A stretch of DNA of 64,000 nucleotides, from the NCBI GenBank assembly GCA_002104945.1, contig MCFH01000079.1:140154-204153 (forward strand), in the 5' to 3' direction. Each line of letters starts with the position of its first letter. The stretch's first letter is position 1. The notes under the pieces were generated by a model. The model had not been told where the DNA came from and searched no databases. It was given only the letters and a program-made list of their open reading frames with translations. The position numbers and the translations under genes are program-made. The DNA is from Piromyces finnis finn (Eukaryota > Fungi > Neocallimastigomycota). Below, one piece after another: positions 5,498-61,063 of this stretch.

Positions 5498-7109
5498 ATG
5501 ATTTCTGGCAACGTTCTCACTAAGACTTCAGGTAGAATATATGAAAGTTCAGAGATATATGGAGTGAAAGTTAAAGATGGAGAAGAGTTAAAAAAAAAAA
5601 AAAAAAGCAACAATTAAAAAATAGAATAGATAGTATACAATAAGTAAATGAAATTGAATGTGAAATGAATAGATGATGTCATTTATTAATCAAAATATAC
5701 ATTTGGAATAAATAAATAATAAAAATAAATAAATAAGTGAAAAGGTGGAATGGAAATGTTTAATAAAAAGAATGAAAAATAATATGAATATGATCAAAAA
5801 AAAAAAAAACATTTTAAATAGAAATCTATATACTAAAATTGTATAAATTATTTAAATATTTAGTCTCTACTTGCAAGAGATTATACTCTACTGCCTACGA
5901 TGCTACCTTAAAGAACTTACTTATCAACAAGAACACTAAGGTCATCACCCAAGGTTTCACTGGTAAACAAGTATGTAAAATAAAAAAAAAAAAAACATAG
6001 ATTAATCAATCATTAAAAAAAAAAAAATCTAGATTCATTAATGAAAATGTAATATATGTTAATCTTGTTAATGTTTAAAATATTATTTTAAAATAGGGTA
6101 CTTTCCACGCCAAGAATGCCCTTGCTTACGGTACTAAGATGGTCGGTGGTGTTTCCCCAAAGAAGGCCGGTACCGTTCACTTAGGTCTTCCAGTCTTCAA
6201 GTCTGTTCAAGATGTAAGTTTTAAATATTATTAAAAATAAAAAGAAAAATTGATTATTAAATTGAAAAATATTAAATTTAAATAGGCTTGTGACAAGCTT
6301 CACCCAGATGCTTCCGTCATCTACGTCCCACCACCAGGTGCTGCTGCTGCTATCTTAGAAGCTATTGAAGCTGAAGTTCCATTAGTTGTTTGTATTACCG
6401 AAGGTATTCCACAACAAGATATGGTTAAGGTAAATTAAAAAAAATGATATCTATATTATACATATTTAGTAAAGTAATTTTGAAAAAAGATTATTAAATA
6501 TAACCATAAAATTTTTATGAATAGGTTGTTGATGCTCTTAACTCCCAAAACAAGTCTAGACTTGTTGGTCCAAACTGTCCAGGTGTCATTAAGGCTGAAG
6601 AATGTAAGATTGGTATTATGCCAGGTCACATTCACACCAAGGGTAAGATCGGTATTGTTTCTCGTTCTGGTACTCTTACCTACGAAGCCGTCAACCAAAC
6701 TACCAAGGCTGGTTTAGGTCAAACCTACTCCTTCGGTATTGGTGGTGATCCATTCAACGGTACTAACTTCATTGATGCCCTCAAGATCTTCCTTGATGAT
6801 GACAACACTGAAGGTATTGTCCTTATTGGTGAAATTGGTGGTTCTGCTGAAGAAGAAGCCTCTGAATTCCTTAAGCAATACAACCTTACCCGTAAGGTTC
6901 CAAAGCCAGTTGTTTCCTTCATTGCTGGTCGTACTGCTCCACCAGGCCGTCGTATGGGTCACGCTGGTGCCATTGTTGCTGGTGGTAAGGGTGGTGCTGA
7001 CGACAAGGTCAAGGCTCTCCAATCCGCTGGTGTTGTTGTCTCCGCTTCCCCAGCTCAAATGGGTGTTAAGTTAAGAGAAACTATGCTTGCTCGTGGTTTA
7101 ATCCATTAA
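5498..7109 (+). CDS. LSC1: Succinyl-CoA ligase (synthetase) alpha subunit, probably hydrogenosomal; 5 exons (5498-5531, 5864-5970, 6097-6213, 6286-6429, 6525-7109)
   Basis: Motifs [48 protein letters not shown] and the phospho-His loop [10 protein letters not shown]. The N-terminal extension [20 protein letters not shown] resembles a mitochondrial-type presequence. Confidence 0.97.
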
Positions 7110-33383: not shown

Positions 33384-34649
33384 ATGAATTCAAATCAAAA
33401 AAGACGCTCTTTAACTTTTGCTGAAAAGTTTGAAGTAAAATTCTTTTTTAAAGCAGAAGCTCCAAGAGAAGTTGCTTTTTCTGAAACAAGCTTTACTACA
33501 GGTAGTGAAAGCTATTATGATGATGATGAATATTGGGATTTAGAAGATTCTTACGATGAAGAAGAAGATTATTATGATAAACATCAAGATGAGGATGATT
33601 ACTATACCTATCATGGTTATCAAGATTATGAAACAAATACTTATGATGATGATGACTATTATTATTATGATGATAACTATGGATACTACAATAATAATAA
33701 TAATAATGTCAATTTTTCTATTCGTTATGAAATGGATCGTTTAAATCATCATTATCAAGATTATGAAGATAGATATGAAGAAGAAATTAGAGGTCGTAGT
33801 TACAGAGAACTTTTTAGTGGATTCAAAAAAGAAGAAGTTAGTGAGGAAAAGGCAAGTGAAAAGTCAACCACTAGAAGATTAGCTTTAGCTAAATTGGAAA
33901 AAGGTCTTTTTCGTCGTCAACAACTTCGTGATTCAGAAAGCTTTAGTGAAACAGAAGAATCAGAAGCTTCTAATTCTAATTCTGAATCTGATCCATTTGA
34001 TGAACCATTATCCCTTACTTCAAATAAAGATTTTATAAAGGATCTTAAACGTGCTAATTCTCCAGTAACTATTAAAGCAACATTTACTAGGGAAATTCCT
34101 ATTTCTATTCCATTGACCAATTCAAGTAGTTACAAGGTTAAAGGTCATGAAATTTCCCAAAGCTTTGATACCTTTAATAAACGTTTACCTTTTTCAACAG
34201 ATATTAATGATCGATTCAAACCTTCTTCTCTTTCAATTTTAGATGCAGATGAAAATCCATTTTCTGCTTTGGATGATACACTTTTGTCTTGTACACCATT
34301 AACCCTTCTTAATAAGACTCCTTTAGTCGTCAATTTATCTTCCACCACCAAAGAACCTGTAAAGGATTTATTAAAATCATCATCAACATCCTCGTCAAAT
34401 AAAACTAAATCATTTGATGTAAAATATATTCCTTCGCTTAATTCGAATGATTTAGTGAAAACAATTTCAAGTAAAAGTCTTTTGTCAAATCATCATAAAA
34501 CAACTCAAGATACTACTTCTATTACAAATATCTTGAGTAATTTACACAATAATACAAATAGTAAGGGTGCTAGTCATAAGGGAATGAAGAAAAGAGCGAG
34601 ATCTTATTCTTCTCCTTCATCCTTACAACAATTATTACCATGCTATTAA
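33384..34649 (+). CDS. Intronless 421-aa hypothetical low-complexity protein (Tyr/Asp-rich N-half, Ser/Thr-rich C-half)
   Basis: A 1266-bp open frame in AT-rich DNA with coding-like GC content and codon usage. No domain recognised except a possible PP1-docking motif at the N-terminus. Confidence 0.8.
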   Translation: MNSNQKRRSLTFAEKFEVKFFFKAEAPREVAFSETSFTTGSESYYDDDEYWDLEDSYDEEEDYYDKHQDEDDYYTYHGYQDYETNTYDDDDYYYYDDNYGYYNNNNNNVNFSIRYEMDRLNHHYQDYEDRYEEEIRGRSYRELFSGFKKEEVSEEKASEKSTTRRLALAKLEKGLFRRQQLRDSESFSETEESEASNSNSESDPFDEPLSLTSNKDFIKDLKRANSPVTIKATFTREIPISIPLTNSSSYKVKGHEISQSFDTFNKRLPFSTDINDRFKPSSLSILDADENPFSALDDTLLSCTPLTLLNKTPLVVNLSSTTKEPVKDLLKSSSTSSSNKTKSFDVKYIPSLNSNDLVKTISSKSLLSNHHKTTQDTTSITNILSNLHNNTNSKGASHKGMKKRARSYSSPSSLQQLLPCY

Positions 34650-40276: not shown

Positions 40277-40935
40277 TTAAACATTACATTTACCAAATTC
40301 AGATTGACATCCTGTGGAACAATAAGAAGAAGTAGTACCACAATATCCCTTCTTACTACAACATTGACCGCTTGGACAGGATCCCCATTCAGAACCACAT
40401 TTACCTTCAGTACATTTTCCATAATTCTTTTGACAGCCAAGATTAGCAGAACAGTAGGCACCACTGGTACCACAGTATCCCTTCTTACTACAACATTGAC
40501 CGCTTGGACAGGATCCCCATTCAGAACCACATTTACCTTCAGTACATTTTCCATATTCCTTTTGACAGCCAAGATTAGCAGAACAGTAGGCACCACTGGT
40601 ACCACAGTATCCCTTCTTACTACAACATTGACCGCTTGGACAGGATCCCCATCCAGAACCACATTTACCTTCAGTACATTTTCCATATTCCTTTTGACAG
40701 CCAAGATTAGCAGAACAGTAGGCACCACTGGTACCACAGTATCCCTTCTTACTACAACATTGACCGTTTGGACAGGATCCCCATCCAGAACCACATTTAC
40801 CTTCAGTACATTTTCCATATTCCTTTTGACAGCCAAGATTAGCAGAACAGTAGGCACCACTGGTACCACAGTATCCCTTCTTACTACAACATTGACCGTT
40901 TGGACAGGATCCAAAATCAATTCCATTTAGAATAC
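40277..40935 (-). repeat. Five tandem 132-bp (44-aa) CBM18-coding repeats
   Basis: The motif tcttactacaacattgacc recurs at 40351, 40483, 40615, 40747 and 40879. Internal copies differ by only a few substitutions. Confidence 0.97.
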
Positions 40936-42079
40936 CACATTTAAAGTTACATTTATTTTCATTTAAAGCGTCTTCATTACATAAACTATATGATGAAGTA
41001 TTGAATATGAATATATATATAAATATATTAAATACATTATAATTTATTTATTGATAAAAAAATAGGTTATACACGTTGAATCTATTTGTTATTGATAGTC
41101 TACACCTCATAAAATAGTATATAAAATTACTATACAAAAAAAAAAAAAAAACATTGATTTTCTTACATTTTATCAGTAGTATTAACATCTTGACAACTAA
41201 AGCAGTTATTTGATACATTTCTAATTTTTTTTTTAAAATTATTTTATATATATATAATTATGAATTTAATAAATTTTTTTTTAACCTATAAAGAAAAAAA
41301 AAAACTATACACTAATTTTTTTCATAGATAGACAAATAAATAAATAAAAAAAATACTAATATTTACAATTTAAGTAATTGAGTTAAATTTTTAACGGAAT
41401 CTGGAATAGTTCCATCAGTTAATCTATTATTGTATAAATATCTAATATCATTATATAAATTGTAATATATATATATAAATAAATAAATAAAAAATAAGTT
41501 TATAGATTATAAATTTAATTATAGTAATAATTAAAGAAAAAAAAAATAGTTTTTAGTTACAAGAACTTTAAAGAAGCTAATTTTCCAATAAATTCAGGAA
41601 CGGAACCAATAAAGAGATTATTATTTAATAATCTAAGTTATTTAAAAAAAAATATATATATATAGAAAGAAAGAAAGAAAGAAAGAAAGAAAAAATTTTA
41701 GAAATAATTAAAATGTGGTTTGTTCATATTAAAAATAATTTTTCTTATCATATTGTGTATTAAAGAAAATATATAGTTACAAATTGGTTAATTTAGTTAA
41801 ATTTCCAATAGAAGAAGGAAGAGTACCACTTAAATTGTTATCTTGTAAAATTCTGAAATTTTTTTTATATTTATAATAAAAATTAAAATCTTTTTTTTTT
41901 TTATGATAAAATAGTATTTATAGTTTTGTTTTATTATAGAATATAAATGATTTTTCTTTTCTTACAATGAATCTAATTTAGTTAAATTTCCAATAGATGA
42001 AGGAATTGATCCAGTAAGCTTATTAATATTTAATTCTCTATATAAAGGTATATATAAAGAATAAATCTATTAGAAAATT

Positions 42080-42112
<33 letters not shown>

Positions 42113-43419
42113 CCATTTTTATAATGACTTTTTTAAAAAAATTATAGATAAATTTTTTCATCTCTTACAGGATAACTAAATTTTCCAAGTTTCCAATAGA
42201 TTCAGGGATATAACCAGTTAATTTATTATTACCTAAATATCTATTGAATGAATTGGTATCATTGATAATAAAATAATTCCAAATATATATATATATATAT
42301 ATAATATAAAAATATTAATCATGGATTGTCCTTTTTTTTTATATTTAAAAAAAAAATATAGTTTTTTTTTATTATGAAGATTATCTTATTTACAAATTAA
42401 CTAATTTTTTTAAATTTCCAATAGAAGAAGGAATTTCTCCAGTGAGACGATTAATATTTAAATCTCTATAAGGATAGAAAAAAAATCAGTAATTAGTTTT
42501 TCCTTTGCTTAATCAAACTTTGATTATTTGTGTAAAAGTTAAAAATTATTAAAAATTTTTTGATAGTATTACAATTCAACTAAATTTTCTAAATTTCCAA
42601 TGGATTCAGGAATGGAACCAGATAAATAGTTATTACCTAAATTTCTATAGAATTGATTTATTATATATATATATATATTTTTTTTTTTACATTTATAATA
42701 ACAATAATATGAAAAAAAAGATATTATTATTATAGTACATATAAAATATATATATATATATTATTATTAACATGATAATAATTAGCTTTCATTACAAATT
42801 AACTAAATTTTTTAAATTTCCAATAGAAGAAGGAATTTCACCAGTTAAATCATTATCACTTAAATTTCTATATTATTTTGGTAAATAGATTATAAAAGCA
42901 TTAATTTAATATAAAAACATATATATATTTTTTTTATAATAATACATTAAATAAGAAAAAAAAAGAGACTTTACAAAATTTTTAAATTTGATAAATTTCC
43001 AATGGTAGAAGGAATACTTCCTTTTAAGGATTGGAGAGTTATTACTCTAAAAGATAGTAATAATAATAAAATATAAAAATTAATATTTTTTTTTATTTCT
43101 ATAATAATAATACTAATGCTACTTCTACGACTACTACTACTACTACTACTATCACTACTATTAATAATGCTAATAATAAAATAGGATAAAATAGGATATA
43201 CTACATTTCTTCTATAGAACTCTTATCTTCTGAACATTTAATATAGGCATGCTTATTACTATATTCACAACAATCATAGTCAGCTCCTTGTCCTAATAAA
43301 CTATTTATGTATTTACATTCTTCACCTACTTCTACACGTTTTAATAGTCTACCAATACTATAGCCAAATGTAGTATAGGTAACGGCTAAAAAGATACCGA
43401 ATAAATTAAATAATTTCAT
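40277..43419 (-). CDS. Secreted LRR + 5 x CBM18 (chitin-binding, hevein-like) protein; exons 43419-43205, 43046-42975, 42867-42796, 42644-42573, 42465-42394, 42240-42169, 42037-41966, 41852-41781, 41632-41561, 41441-41367, 41220-41167, a short linker exon ending at 41073 (start uncertain), 40985-40277
   Basis: Signal peptide + KR site + Cys cap (EECKYIN...DCC...IKC). Nine LRR exons of consensus LxLxxNxLTGxIPxSIGNLxxLxxL. The last exon encodes five repeats of CGSGWGSCPxGQCCSKKGYCGTSGAYCSANLGCQKEYGKC. All introns are GT-AG, phase 2. No TM segment seen. Confidence 0.9.
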
Positions 43420-46289: not shown

Positions 46290-47435
46290 TTAAGCACTAA
46301 ATACAGGAGTTCTTATTTGAGATTGTTTTCTTTTTTCGTCATTACTTCTACTACGAATACACAAAACGATTATGAAAACTACAACAAATGCTAAGAAACC
46401 AATCAAGATATAAATATATATCATTTTATTTGGTATATAATAGTCATAGATATAGTTAGTATTTTTCTCAATAGGACAATTATAGGCTTCTTCAGCAACT
46501 TCCGGGAAGGTAAAATCGGTTGAATCTTCGACAACTAAATAATCCAAAATTCTATGTTCCTCCGATTGAGAATAAAGAATGTTAAAATTATTTTTTGAAA
46601 TTTGAGAATTTTTACCAATTAAAAAATAGTCGTATTTTTTATTATTATCATTACCAGATTTAAATTCCATTCCATTAATTTTTGGGTCATCATAGGTGAC
46701 ATCCATAGCATACCATAAACCATCCTCCATTTGAACCAAATTCCATTCATGTGTTTTACTACTGACAATGACACTGGGTATTCCTACTAATTGACAAATA
46801 TAGGTGAAGGCTTCAGCATATCCTTCACAAACACTTGCATGCTCAACTAAAGCACCGTATAAATTATACAAACTATACTCTTCTCCGTTTTGGTAGACAA
46901 CATTTTTAATTAAATAATCATGAATTTGTTGTAATTTATGACAAGTGGAGGGTTGTTTTTTCACATTTTCAATTAAACCACTAATATTTTTATTAACTTT
47001 ATCTAACATACCAACCAATTCTTCTTCTTCATAGCTACGTTTAAAAGAAATTTTTATTTTTTGAATGACATTATCTAACGTGGTAATCGACTGTTGATTT
47101 CCACGACCAACCCAAAAATATTTTGGATTATCCATAACAAAGGCACTTGTTACTCTTAAACCTGCATGTGAAGCATCATTTGCATCGTTTAACTCAACAT
47201 TAGAGATAGTAAAATCGTATAATGGGTGTCCGGTTTCCAAACCCTCTTCTAATTGTTCTTTTAATTTATCATATATAATTTTTTCATAACTATGTAATTG
47301 GTTGTAATAATAATATAAAGATGATTGTTGGTCATTTTCTCTTTTTTGAATGGTGGTGTTATATGTAATAGAATAAGAAAATATTGTATAGAATACAAAT
47401 CCTGATAATATGATAAAGTGATTAAAAAATTTCAT
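46290..47435 (-). CDS. Intronless transglutaminase-like (TGc/papain-fold) type I membrane protein, 381 aa
   Basis: Signal peptide + KR, HDYLIKNVVY, SVCEGYAEAF (Cys), THEWNLV (His), WYAMDVTYDDP (Asp), then a C-terminal hydrophobic helix IYIYILIGFLAFVVVFIIVLCI and a basic tail. Confidence 0.88.
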   Translation of the reverse strand: MKFFNHFIILSGFVFYTIFSYSITYNTTIQKRENDQQSSLYYYYNQLHSYEKIIYDKLKEQLEEGLETGHPLYDFTISNVELNDANDASHAGLRVTSAFVMDNPKYFWVGRGNQQSITTLDNVIQKIKISFKRSYEEEELVGMLDKVNKNISGLIENVKKQPSTCHKLQQIHDYLIKNVVYQNGEEYSLYNLYGALVEHASVCEGYAEAFTYICQLVGIPSVIVSSKTHEWNLVQMEDGLWYAMDVTYDDPKINGMEFKSGNDNNKKYDYFLIGKNSQISKNNFNILYSQSEEHRILDYLVVEDSTDFTFPEVAEEAYNCPIEKNTNYIYDYYIPNKMIYIYILIGFLAFVVVFIIVLCIRSRSNDEKRKQSQIRTPVFSA

Positions 47436-60342: not shown

Positions 60343-61063
60343 ATGCCAACAAGAACTGTTAGTAGTTTCAACATGTATGAAATTCAAAAGTCTAACTATA
60401 TTGGTATGTATATTAATATATTAAAAATTAGTATAAAATTATTCTTGAAATATGTATTAATTGAAATATATAATTATTATATACTCATTAGCTCCAGAAA
60501 TGAATACATATAGAAGTAACAAGCGTAGCAGTATTAGCTCAAATTATAGTTACTATAGTAACAAAAGTGATGAATATTATAAACCATTAAGTTCTGGTAT
60601 AATAGGTTTTACTGCTGAATTAGTTGCTGCAGTAATTCCATGTTCTGGATATAATGCTAAGCATCCAAAGACTCGTTATCTTCCAGAACTCTTACCTTTT
60701 ATTAATAAAGTTTGTAAGAAGTGTAGAGTTGAATTACGTACTATGCTCTACGCTTTAATATATGCTAAGCGTTTTGGTGAAGCTTTAGAACGCCAAGGTT
60801 CTAGTGCTAGAGGTGAATATGGCACTTGTCATAGAATATTTTTAGCTTCATTATTATTAGCAAAGAAAGCACAAGACGACGATGAAGTATTTTTTGATAA
60901 TAATCAATTGGCCGAATGCACAGATGGCATTTGGAGTGTTAAAGATATTGAAATGATGGAAAAGGCATTAGCCTCAACCATTGGTTTTGATTTCATAGTT
61001 GATGAAGAAACTATTAAGGGCTTTGTTGAAGAACATCGTTCTGAATTATGCTGGTTTCGTTAA
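60343..61063 (+). CDS. Pho85-type cyclin (Pcl1/Pcl2 family); 2 exons (60343-60403, 60492-61063)
   Basis: Cyclin-box motifs LPELLPFI..., TMLYALIYAKR, GEYGTCHRIFLASLLLAKK, WSVKDIEMMEKAL...IGFDF. The true ATG is upstream of the ORF-track start, across a GT-AG intron. Confidence 0.88.

What the first reader, a model, noticed from the sequence alone, without database searches (positions are those of the whole stretch)
40277..43419. Secreted plant-type LRR solenoid fused to five chitin-binding CBM18 modules: candidate wall-tethered recognition or inhibitor protein
The architecture is signal peptide, KR site, Cys cap, nine 24-aa LRRs of the plant-specific class (LTGxIPxSIGNL, as in RLK/RLP/PGIP ectodomains), a Cys linker and 5 x CBM18, with no TM or kinase. 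CBM18 would anchor it on the fungus's own chitin wall while the LRR face binds a partner. Possible roles are sensing or adhering to rumen microbes or plant tissue, or inhibiting bacterial chitinases in a PGIP-like way. Fungal innate recognition is usually described through intracellular NLRs, so an extracellular LRR-lectin would be a different system. LRR and CBM18 expansions are known in gut fungi, but I know of no functional characterisation of this fusion.
Basis: partly seen in the sequence, partly recalled or inferred. Interest (0 to 1): 0.8.

Follow-up and report, generated by a model that had tools for sequence, protein, structure and literature searches.

The report
Secreted LRR–chitin-lectin protein, gut fungus
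An intact gene of the anaerobic gut fungus Piromyces finnis encodes a secreted protein that joins a plant-receptor-like leucine-rich-repeat horseshoe to five chitin-binding lectin modules; it belongs to an unstudied family found across gut fungi, and what it binds is still unknown.

Summary
On the minus strand, 43419..40277, lies a clean 12-exon gene (all GT-AG, all introns phase 2, 1629 nt, 542 aa). It encodes a signal peptide, a KR site, a Cys N-cap, nine plant-type LRRs (one per 72/75-nt exon), a Cys C-cap exon, and one exon with five CBM18/hevein modules (Pfam E 6e-35). There is no TM, GPI tail or kinase.

The window is Piromyces finnis GCA_002104945.1. The public annotation calls only a 5'-partial 298-aa gene here, so the full model is new for this locus.

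The fusion itself is real as a family. A P. finnis paralogue (P0068) has the same exon plan. Six uninterrupted ORFs on metagenome or transcript contigs carry the same signal peptide, caps, 7-23 LRRs and 1-8 CBM18.

The scan had already noted sister genes elsewhere in this genome. No paper found describes the fusion.

Function is inferred, not shown. Most likely a multivalent, WGA-like lectin array tethers a PGIP/LRX-like binding solenoid to a GlcNAc polymer, probably the fungus's own wall. One caveat: all five modules have Lys where hevein has its first stacking Trp.

Moderately interesting; new variant of a known kind.

The parts
43205..43419 (-). Exon 1: start codon, signal peptide (about residues 1-19/22, window 43419-43354), dibasic KR at residues 27-28 (43341-43336) followed by acidic residues (Kex2-type site), then a 4-Cys N-terminal cap (C..CC..C)
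   Evidence: The maximum Kyte-Doolittle 19-residue window is 1.26, at residues 4-22. The same signal peptide, KR site and cap motif ECKYIN..CC occur in P0244 and in L005/L007/L010/L011. Pfam finds no family for this exon.
42975..43046 (-). Exon 2: LRR 1 (72 nt, phase 2-2; irregular first repeat)
42796..42867 (-). Exon 3: LRR 2 (72 nt)
   Evidence: Pfam LRR_1 E 0.0014 for the single exon.
42573..42644 (-). Exon 4: LRR 3 (72 nt). The public 298-aa gene call starts inside this exon, at 42634.
42394..42465 (-). Exon 5: LRR 4 (72 nt)
42169..42240 (-). Exon 6: LRR 5 (72 nt)
41966..42037 (-). Exon 7: LRR 6 (72 nt)
41781..41852 (-). Exon 8: LRR 7 (72 nt)
41561..41632 (-). Exon 9: LRR 8 (72 nt, more divergent)
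41367..41441 (-). Exon 10: LRR 9 (75 nt, one extra residue)
41167..41220 (-). Exon 11: C-terminal LRR cap with Cys pair (NNCxSC) and two N-glycosylation sequons
   Evidence: The same xNCxxC cap occurs in P0068, P0244 and L005-L011.
40277..40985 (-). Exon 12: short Cys-containing linker, five CBM18 (hevein) modules, and the stop codon at 40279-40277. It has no Met codon, no TM segment and no GPI-type tail.
   Evidence: Pfam PF00187 E 6e-35 with 5 stretches. The best solved relative is wheat germ agglutinin, E 2.7e-13. Also.
40808..40939 (-). CBM18 module 1 (8 Cys, with a 4-residue insertion in the first loop)
40676..40795 (-). CBM18 module 2
   Evidence: It is part of the 132-nt tandem array, 98% identical.
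40544..40663 (-). CBM18 module 3
40412..40531 (-). CBM18 module 4
40286..40399 (-). CBM18 module 5 (shorter last loop)
   Evidence: best Pfam stretch 196-233.

Best explanation
This is an intact 12-exon gene of Piromyces finnis for a 542-residue secreted glycoprotein with two working halves. The N-terminal half is a plant-ectodomain-type LRR solenoid: Cys N-cap, nine 24-residue repeats and a Cys C-cap. It is about the size of PGIP or of the LRR domain of plant LRX proteins. The C-terminal half is a wheat-germ-agglutinin-like string of five hevein/CBM18 modules. After signal-peptide removal and probable Kex2 cleavage at the KR site, the multivalent CBM18 string most likely holds the protein non-covalently on a GlcNAc polymer, most probably the chitin of the fungus's own wall. 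The concave face of the solenoid, where the repeats differ from each other, then binds a still unknown protein or peptide partner at the wall surface. The protein has no membrane anchor and no signalling domain, so it would act as a wall-resident binding or adaptor protein (LRX/PGIP-like logic), not as a receptor in its own right. What is shown: the gene structure, the domains, the absence of a TM or kinase, and membership of a gut-fungal family with variable LRR and CBM18 numbers. What is inferred: secretion, Kex2 processing, chitin binding, wall location and the existence of an LRR ligand.
For: Gene model. There are 11 GT-AG phase-2 introns and no internal stop. E12 has no Met codon, so it needs the upstream exons.

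Domains. CBM18 scores E 6e-35 with 5 stretches. The plant-type LRR consensus is invariant at its framework positions and variable at repeat positions 1, 3, 4 and 6, the xLxxNx strand.

No other anchor. No hydrophobic segment exists beyond the signal peptide, and eight N-glycosylation sequons lie in the LRR/cap part.

Paralogue. P. finnis P0068 has the same signal peptide, KR site, cap, one-LRR 72-nt phase-2 exons, C-cap exon and CBM18 exon.

Whole architecture in one ORF. P0244/L004 (354 aa on a 1065-nt contig) and L005, L007, L008, L010 and L011 (639-927 aa) each carry it uninterrupted.

Structure. The LRR part of P0068 matches plant GSO1, FLS2 and MIK2 ectodomains at E 1e-110 to 1e-94. The AF2 model of P0244 (pLDDT above 90 over the solenoid) matches MIK2, ERL1, RGFR1 and BRI1. 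PGIP reaches TM 0.57 by target and LRX 0.47-0.48. E12 matches WGA over four modules.

Literature. CBM18-only lectin-like proteins in chytrids are proposed to coat the fungus's own chitin (PMC3569864). LRX proteins are wall-anchored LRR proteins that bind RALF peptides (PMC12759080).
Against: The 0.30-0.31 share of words in four possible RNA runs fits exons only but cannot tell which exons.

The public annotation models only 298 aa here, so an exon-skipped or shorter product is not excluded.

All five CBM18 modules read S-K-K-G-Y...Y. The residue equivalent to hevein Trp21 or WGA Tyr is Lys, so affinity or specificity for chitin may differ from classical hevein domains.

Nothing identifies an LRR ligand or a downstream partner. 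Variable x positions are a property of every LRR protein, so they are not evidence of recognition.
Confidence: 0.55

Rival explanations
1. It is a secreted bridging lectin aimed at foreign surfaces. The CBM18 string would bind GlcNAc-containing walls of other organisms: bacterial peptidoglycan, methanogen pseudomurein, or other fungi. The LRR part would bind a second target or the fungal surface. The protein would then agglutinate or dock partners or competitors.
For: CBM18 genes are the most strongly induced CAZyme-class genes when Caecomyces churrovis is co-cultured with Methanobacterium bryantii, and the authors suggest a role in fungus-methanogen association (PMC8665504). An 'LRR receptor-like' gene and a 'chitin binding protein' gene are among the top regulated genes in Pecoramyces co-culture (PMC6414434). 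Gut-fungal CBM18 modules are also fused to lysozyme, NlpC/P60 and phage-tail-lysozyme domains (PF00959, PF00877, PF18013), which points to peptidoglycan as a possible CBM18 ligand. The Lys-for-aromatic change may mean an altered sugar specificity.
Against: None of the cited expression data concern this gene or this subfamily. Hevein/CBM18 modules are classically chitin binders, and the producer's own wall is the nearest and most abundant ligand. No binding data exist.
Confidence: 0.25
2. It is a wall shield or inhibitor. The CBM18 string would coat chitin as Avr4 or chytrid lectin-like CBM18 proteins are proposed to do. The PGIP-sized LRR domain would directly inhibit lytic enzymes of rumen bacteria, such as chitinases and glucanases.
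For: The LRR domain has PGIP dimensions and caps. The PGIP structures 1ogq and 8ikw are structural matches to the homologue model. The shielding role of chitin-binding proteins is discussed in PMC3569864.
Against: PGIP is not a closer relative than the receptor ectodomains. It is absent from the 60 best sequence matches and ranks 40th structurally. The wide variation of LRR number in the family, 7 to about 23, fits a diversified binding repertoire better than one inhibitor-enzyme pair. No assay exists.
Confidence: 0.1
3. The 542-aa model is not the real product. The locus would instead make a shorter, exon-skipped protein like the public 298-aa model, or LRR-only and CBM18-only products.
For: The public annotation calls 40277-42634 with 298 aa. 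By arithmetic this fits part of E4, one 72-nt exon, E11 and E12. All LRR exons are symmetric (phase 2-2), so skipping keeps the frame. Every donor reads xx|GTA(A/G), so any retained intron ends the protein at once.
Against: The public model is 5'-partial: it starts inside an exon without an ATG or a signal peptide. E1-E3 are intact, in phase and homologous to the N-termini of family members. E12 has no Met codon. Relatives encode the full architecture in single ORFs.
Confidence: 0.1

Closest known systems
Piromyces finnis 'L domain-like protein' (P0068, 408 aa) and unnamed relatives P0244 and L005-L011
   Same: They share the signal peptide, the KR site, the Cys N-cap (ECKYIN..CC type), plant-type 24-residue LRRs, the xNCxxC C-cap, and CBM18 modules of the CCS[AK]KGYCGT type. 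None has a TM segment. P0068 has the same one-LRR-per-72-nt phase-2 exon plan.
   Different: Module numbers differ. The window gene has 9 LRRs and 5 CBM18. P0068 has 4+2 LRRs in two cassettes and 2 CBM18. The others have 7-23 LRRs and 1-8 CBM18. Several relatives have their LRR array in one long exon. None has been studied.
Plant LRR-extensins (LRX)
   Same: These are secreted proteins without a TM segment or kinase. They have an N-terminal plant-type LRR domain with a Cys-rich end, followed by a C-terminal domain whose job is to hold the protein in the cell wall. LRX2 is a sequence match and a structural match (6qxp/6qwn).
   Different: The LRX anchor is a Pro/Hyp-rich extensin that is covalently cross-linked into the plant wall. 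Here the anchor is a non-covalent lectin array for GlcNAc polymers. LRX proteins bind RALF peptides and work with FERONIA; no such partners are known in gut fungi.
Plant PGIP (polygalacturonase-inhibiting protein)
   Same: PGIP has a signal peptide, a Cys N-cap, about 10 plant-type LRRs and a Cys C-cap, and it is secreted to the wall. It is a structural match with TM 0.57 by target.
   Different: PGIP has no lectin domain. It is not a closer relative than receptor ectodomains. An inhibitory function was not tested here.
Wheat germ agglutinin, other multi-hevein lectins, and chytrid 'lectin-like' CBM18 proteins
   Same: They carry tandem 8-Cys hevein/CBM18 modules, and WGA aligns over four modules. 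Multivalent GlcNAc or chitin binding is their known or proposed function (PMC3569864).
   Different: They have no LRR domain. In this protein the first stacking aromatic of the binding site is Lys in all five modules.
Plant LRR receptor kinases and receptor-like proteins (GSO1, FLS2, MIK2, ERL1)
   Same: They give the best sequence and fold matches for the LRR solenoid and its N-cap.
   Different: This protein has no transmembrane helix and no kinase. The lectin string takes the place of the membrane anchor.
Second gut-fungal LRR-CBM18 group (P0018, P0033, P0050, P0054, P0070, P0106, P0114)
   Same: They join an LRR domain to a C-terminal CBM18 array, and they come from Neocallimastigomycota.
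   Different: Their LRRs are of the 'typical'/SDS22-like kind (..NxIxxIP..) with a different C-cap (GNxNIxGKTLTN..C). Their CBM18 modules keep the aromatic residue (CCSKYGWCG). They are probably an independent fusion.

Membership tests
CBM18 / hevein domain (Pfam PF00187 Chitin_bind_1) | A module of about 40 residues with the 8-Cys pattern, scoring above the Pfam gathering threshold | tested here: met
   E 6e-35, 119.7 bits against a cut-off of 27.8, with 5 stretches; 42 Cys in 235 residues and a regular C-C-CC-C-C-C-C pattern.
CBM18 / hevein domain (Pfam PF00187 Chitin_bind_1) | A sugar-binding Ser plus three aromatic residues (hevein S19, W21, W23, Y30) | tested here: inconclusive
   All five modules read S-K-K-G-Y .. 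Y. Ser, the second aromatic and the third aromatic are kept, but the first aromatic is Lys (alignment to WGA). Family members share this.
CBM18 / hevein domain (Pfam PF00187 Chitin_bind_1) | Binds chitin or GlcNAc oligomers | not testable with these tools
   This needs a pull-down or ITC with recombinant protein.
Plant-specific class of extracellular LRR (RLK/RLP/PGIP/LRX ectodomains) | 24-residue repeats with the consensus LxxLxxLxLxxNxLsGxIPxxLGxL | tested here: met
   eight repeats of 24 residues and one of 25. G, P, I-G and two L positions are invariant and N is nearly invariant. Single exons reach LRR_1 E 0.001-0.1. The homologues P0244 and P0068 pass the LRR_1, LRR_8 and LRR_14 thresholds.
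Plant-specific class of extracellular LRR (RLK/RLP/PGIP/LRX ectodomains) | A Cys-pair N-terminal cap (LRRNT_2, PF08263) | tested here: inconclusive
   E1 has four Cys (C..CC..C) but no Pfam hit at E<=1. The cap of P0068 aligns with the GSO1 N-cap in phmmer.
Plant-specific class of extracellular LRR (RLK/RLP/PGIP/LRX ectodomains) | The closest solved structures are plant ectodomains | tested here: met
This was tested on homologues only: P0068 by sequence and the P0244 model by fold.
LRR receptor kinase / receptor-like protein | A single transmembrane helix after the LRR domain (plus a kinase for RLKs) | tested here: not met
   no 19-residue window is above 0.84 outside the signal peptide. The ORF ends 2 residues after the last CBM18. 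Pfam finds no kinase.
LRR-extensin (LRX) | A C-terminal extensin domain (Ser-Pro(n) repeats) | tested here: not met
   E12 has 5 Pro in 235 residues, all inside CBM18 modules. The protein works like an LRX at most; it is not a member.
PGIP | An LRR-only secreted protein that inhibits polygalacturonase, and a specific sequence relationship to PGIPs | tested here: not met
   An extra CBM18 array is present. PGIP is absent from the 60 best sequence matches and ranks 40th by fold. Inhibition cannot be tested here.
Gut-fungal SP-KR-cap-plant LRR-cap-CBM18 family (unnamed; P0068, P0244, L005-L011) | A shared signal peptide, KR site, ECKYIN..CC cap, xNCxxC cap and CCS[AK]KGYCG-type CBM18, in that order | tested here: met
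   E1 is 28/74 identical to P0244 and 27/70 identical to P0068, and E12 is 60/102 identical to P0068.

The most novel reading that the evidence does not exclude
The family would be a wall-tethered extracellular recognition repertoire of a fungus. A constant lectin anchor would display variable plant-type LRR arrays (7 to about 23 repeats) that recognise non-self molecules or dock syntrophic partners such as methanogens. It would work together with the membrane-anchored plant-type LRR proteins of the same genome. That would be a surface LRR recognition layer in a kingdom where extracellular LRR receptors are described as almost absent (PMC2939053).
Probability: 0.15. Interest if true: 0.8.

Novelty: new variant of a known kind. 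Interest (0 to 1): 0.5.

Why it matters
Fungi are textbook examples of organisms without extracellular LRR receptors: Soanes & Talbot 2010 found them absent from 45 of 49 genomes. Gut fungi break that rule. This gene shows one way they use the plant-type LRR ectodomain. It is placed on a lectin string that should stick to a GlcNAc wall rather than on a membrane anchor, a design parallel to plant LRX proteins.

CBM18 genes are the strongest responders when gut fungi meet methanogens, but their functions are unknown. An LRR-CBM18 fusion gives a concrete, expressible bait for asking what these proteins bind.

In practical terms, the locus is mis-modelled in the public annotation (298 aa partial against 542 aa). 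Counts of secreted LRR and CBM18 proteins in gut fungi are therefore likely to be underestimates wherever one-repeat micro-exons are involved.

Tried and rejected
My arithmetic on the 0.31 share cannot tell apart E1+E12+UTRs, E12 plus micro-exons, or the public model, so I use it only as a hint.

2. Word search with P0068 as a whole. It was swamped by bacterial and plant LRR proteins. The window's own protein did not appear, and no other LRR+CBM18 protein was listed.

3. Word search restricted to the cap+CBM18 part of P0068. It gave only 10 candidates, but these included P0244, which was useful.

4. Pfam on E1 and on two LRR exons gave nothing. A FNIP hit on E10 is below threshold and I disregard it.

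5. I compared L017 with L007 to look for a retained intron. They are collinear, so this gave no information.

6. I first read the metagenome contigs as cDNAs. L006 keeps a GT..AG intron at the position of window intron 1, and L009 has an insert at the LRR phase-2 position. The contigs may therefore be genomic or partly unspliced, and I rest only on the fact that the ORFs are uninterrupted.

7. The big representative search was not run. The operators ask to spare it when the domains are clear.

8. Literature searches for the fusion found nothing.
Full report
**What is in the sequence.** The window is extremely AT-rich: intergenic and intronic GC is 8-19%. On the minus strand between 43419 and 40277 I defined twelve exons.
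- E1 is 215 nt.
- E2-E9 are eight exons of exactly 72 nt.
- E10 is 75 nt, E11 is 54 nt and E12 is 709 nt.

All eleven introns are 107-181 nt long, start with GTA(A/G), end with AG, and interrupt the codon after its second base (phase 2). The exons add up to 1629 nt, or 542 codons plus a stop, with no internal stop. Every donor reads xx|GTAA or xx|GTAG, so reading through any intron hits a stop at once. This is why the mechanical ORF list shows only fragments.

**What the exons encode.**
- E1 encodes a hydrophobic N-terminus, the only such segment in the protein. A KR pair followed by acidic residues comes next, then a four-Cys cap.
- E2-E10 each encode one repeat of the plant-specific LRR consensus. 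The split codon is the Leu that precedes the xLxxNxL strand.
- The framework positions are invariant across the 72-nt exons: G, IP, IGNL and the Leu residues. The positions of the xLxxNx strand and the last turn vary.
- E11 is a Cys-pair C-cap.
- E12 holds a short Cys linker and five hevein/CBM18 modules, and ends two residues after the last one. Pfam Chitin_bind_1 scores E 6e-35 with five stretches.
- Modules 2-5 form a 132-nt tandem array that is 98% identical.

Strict LRR and CBM18 motifs occur nowhere else in the window.

**Source and public annotation.** Two neighbouring single-exon ORFs of the window are exact products of Piromyces finnis GCA_002104945.1, contig MCFH01000079.1. In that record the only gene called at this place runs from window 40277 to 42634 and has 298 residues. 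It starts inside my exon 4, without an ATG or a signal peptide. By arithmetic it fits part of E4, one 72-nt exon, E11 and E12. The full 542-residue architecture is thus not what the public annotation holds for this locus. No protein of the window appeared in the two word searches whose length range could have held one.

**Is the LRR-CBM18 join real?** I could not get RNA evidence for this locus. Four runs, guessed to be RNA, hold 0.30-0.31 of the sampled words. That fits exons without introns but does not tell which exons. This was a filter and is no evidence of anything. The join rests on four other lines of evidence.
1. All eleven junctions, including E10-E11-E12, keep the frame.
2. E12 has no Met codon in 235 codons and no signal peptide of its own, although it is a Cys-rich extracellular module.
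3. A P. finnis paralogue, P0068, has the same layout: signal peptide, KR site, cap, 72-nt one-LRR phase-2 exons, C-cap exon and a final CBM18 exon. It is annotated 'L domain-like protein', is 408 aa long and lies on another contig.
4. Relatives carry the whole architecture in a single uninterrupted ORF. These are P0244 on a 1065-nt JGI contig (GC3 15%) and L005, L007, L008, L010 and L011 from the metagenome collection (639-927 residues).

All of these relatives share a signal peptide of the MK(L/F)..L(F/V)..VLYTTF type, a KR site and the ECKYIN..CC cap; the window's E1 reads ECKYINSLLG..CC. They also share 7 to about 23 plant-type LRRs, an xNCIDC cap, and one to eight CBM18 modules of the CCS[AK]KGYCGT type, with no hydrophobic tail.

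Two further contigs show that these contigs need not be cDNA. L006 keeps a GT..AG intron at the position of window intron 1, and L009 has an insert at the LRR phase-2 position. Whether the contigs are cDNA or genomic, the fusion is one reading frame.

**What the two halves resemble.**
- The LRR part of P0068 matches solved plant receptor ectodomains (GSO1, FLS2, MIK2, ERL2, PEPR1) at E 1e-110 to 1e-80. The alignment runs through the N-cap.
- An AlphaFold2 model of P0244 was built with a 26-sequence alignment. Mean pLDDT is 82, and it is above 90 over the solenoid.
- The model's best fold matches are MIK2, ERL1, RGFR1 and BRI1. Proteins of similar size follow: a plant ice-binding LRR protein (TM 0.61 by target), PGIP (0.57) and LRX (0.47-0.48).
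- E12 aligns over four consecutive modules with wheat germ agglutinin, E 2.7e-13.
- In that alignment, the Ser, the second aromatic and the third aromatic of the sugar site are kept. The first aromatic (WGA Tyr, hevein Trp21 by established numbering) is Lys in all five modules. The same holds across this family. The other gut-fungal CBM18 modules mostly read CCSKYGWCG.

**Context.**
- Word search with E12 shows that CBM18 in gut fungi is fused to many partners: CE4 deacetylases, lysozyme-type and NlpC/P60 domains, CotH and others.
- It also shows a second, different LRR-CBM18 group with SDS22-like repeats and another C-cap.
- First-stage and follow-up notes of this scan list several more LRR-CBM18 genes and arrays of membrane-anchored plant-type LRR genes in the same genome. 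I did not re-test those.
- Soanes & Talbot 2010 found extracellular LRR receptors in only 4 of 49 fungal genomes; no gut fungus was then available.
- LRR and chitin-binding domains are both listed among the most abundant domains of gut-fungal genomes, without mention of a fusion (PMC6004548).
- CBM18 genes are the most induced class in Caecomyces-methanogen co-culture (PMC8665504).
- No paper with LRR plus CBM18 or chitin-binding in gut fungi was found.

**How it most likely works.**
- Shown: a secretory-type N-terminus, a plant-type LRR solenoid with caps, a WGA-like five-module lectin string, and no membrane anchor or catalytic or signalling domain.
- Inferred: the protein is secreted, trimmed at KR, and N-glycosylated (eight sequons, all in the LRR and cap part).
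- Inferred: its multivalent lectin string holds it on a GlcNAc polymer. The producer's own chitin wall is the nearest ligand.
- Inferred: the LRR concave face then offers a binding surface at the wall. This is the logic of plant LRX proteins (wall-anchored LRR proteins that bind peptides; PMC12759080) and of PGIP.

I put this at about 0.55. The main rival, at 0.25, is a bridging lectin aimed at foreign GlcNAc walls such as peptidoglycan or pseudomurein. The co-culture data, the lysozyme-CBM18 fusions and the altered binding site keep this open. A PGIP-like inhibitor or shield (0.1) and a wrong or alternative gene model (0.1) are the remaining readings.

**Membership.** The protein is a member of CBM18 and of the plant-specific LRR class, by tests made here. 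It is a member of the unnamed gut-fungal family defined above. It is not an RLK/RLP because it has no TM segment or kinase. It is not an LRX because it has no extensin. It is not specifically a PGIP. It may nevertheless work like LRX or PGIP.

**Novelty and score.** Both domains are known, and the fusion is already present, unnamed and unstudied, in public protein sets and in this scan's notes on other DNA of the same genome. New here are three things:
- the full model of this locus;
- the demonstration that the plant-type subfamily has its own signal peptide, caps and a Lys-substituted CBM18 subtype across several gut fungi;
- the LRX-like reading.

I rate it a new variant of a known kind, with interest 0.5.

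All searches were done exon by exon or with stored homologues.

Noticed in passing
window 40277-42634 (-): The public P. finnis annotation (GCA_002104945.1, MCFH01000079.1) calls a 5'-partial 298-aa gene here. It starts inside LRR exon 4 and must omit most LRR micro-exons. One-repeat 72-nt exons seem to defeat the gene caller.
   Followed up: partly
window 40335-40912: CBM18 modules 2-5 form a 132-nt tandem array with 4.4 copies at 98% identity. This points to very recent duplication or concerted evolution. The LRR exons, by contrast, are only 76-86% identical to each other at best.
   Followed up: partly
window 41167-43205 (all 11 donor sites): Every intron is phase 2 and begins GTAA or GTAG. 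Retention of any intron therefore adds one residue and then stops translation. An unspliced or partly spliced RNA would give truncated LRR-only products.
   Followed up: yes
L006:620-700 and L009:815-890: Relatives on metagenome contigs have their LRR arrays in one long exon. They still keep an intron or insert at positions homologous to window intron 1 and to the LRR phase-2 site. The L009 insert lacks a GT donor. Intron number in this family varies strongly between gut fungi.
   Followed up: partly
proteins P0018, P0033, P0050, P0054, P0070, P0106, P0114: This is a second, different LRR-CBM18 fusion group in gut fungi. It has SDS22-like/typical LRRs, a GNxNIxGKTLTN..C cap and classical CCSKYGWCG modules. 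It is probably an independent fusion of the same two domain types.
   Followed up: no
proteins P0024, P0034, P0080, P0086, P0241, P0243: Gut-fungal CBM18 modules are also fused to phage-type lysozyme, NlpC/P60, phage-tail lysozyme and CotH domains. This hints that some CBM18 modules may target bacterial peptidoglycan rather than chitin.
   Followed up: no
protein P0001 (303 aa, JGI contigs): This protein is the best match to E12, with 73% identity. It carries the same Lys-substituted CBM18 subtype behind an unrelated Cys-containing N-terminal domain that has no Pfam family.
   Followed up: no
window 46290-47435 (-), 33384-34649 (+), 6618-7109 (+), 60461-61063 (+): These are the neighbouring ORFs. 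They are a transglutaminase-core protein (PF01841), a 421-aa protein with no Pfam family, an exon of succinyl-CoA ligase (PF00549) and a cyclin N-domain exon. None is related to the LRR-CBM18 gene, which has no paralogue in this window.
   Followed up: partly
They lie in an AT-rich intron.
   Followed up: no
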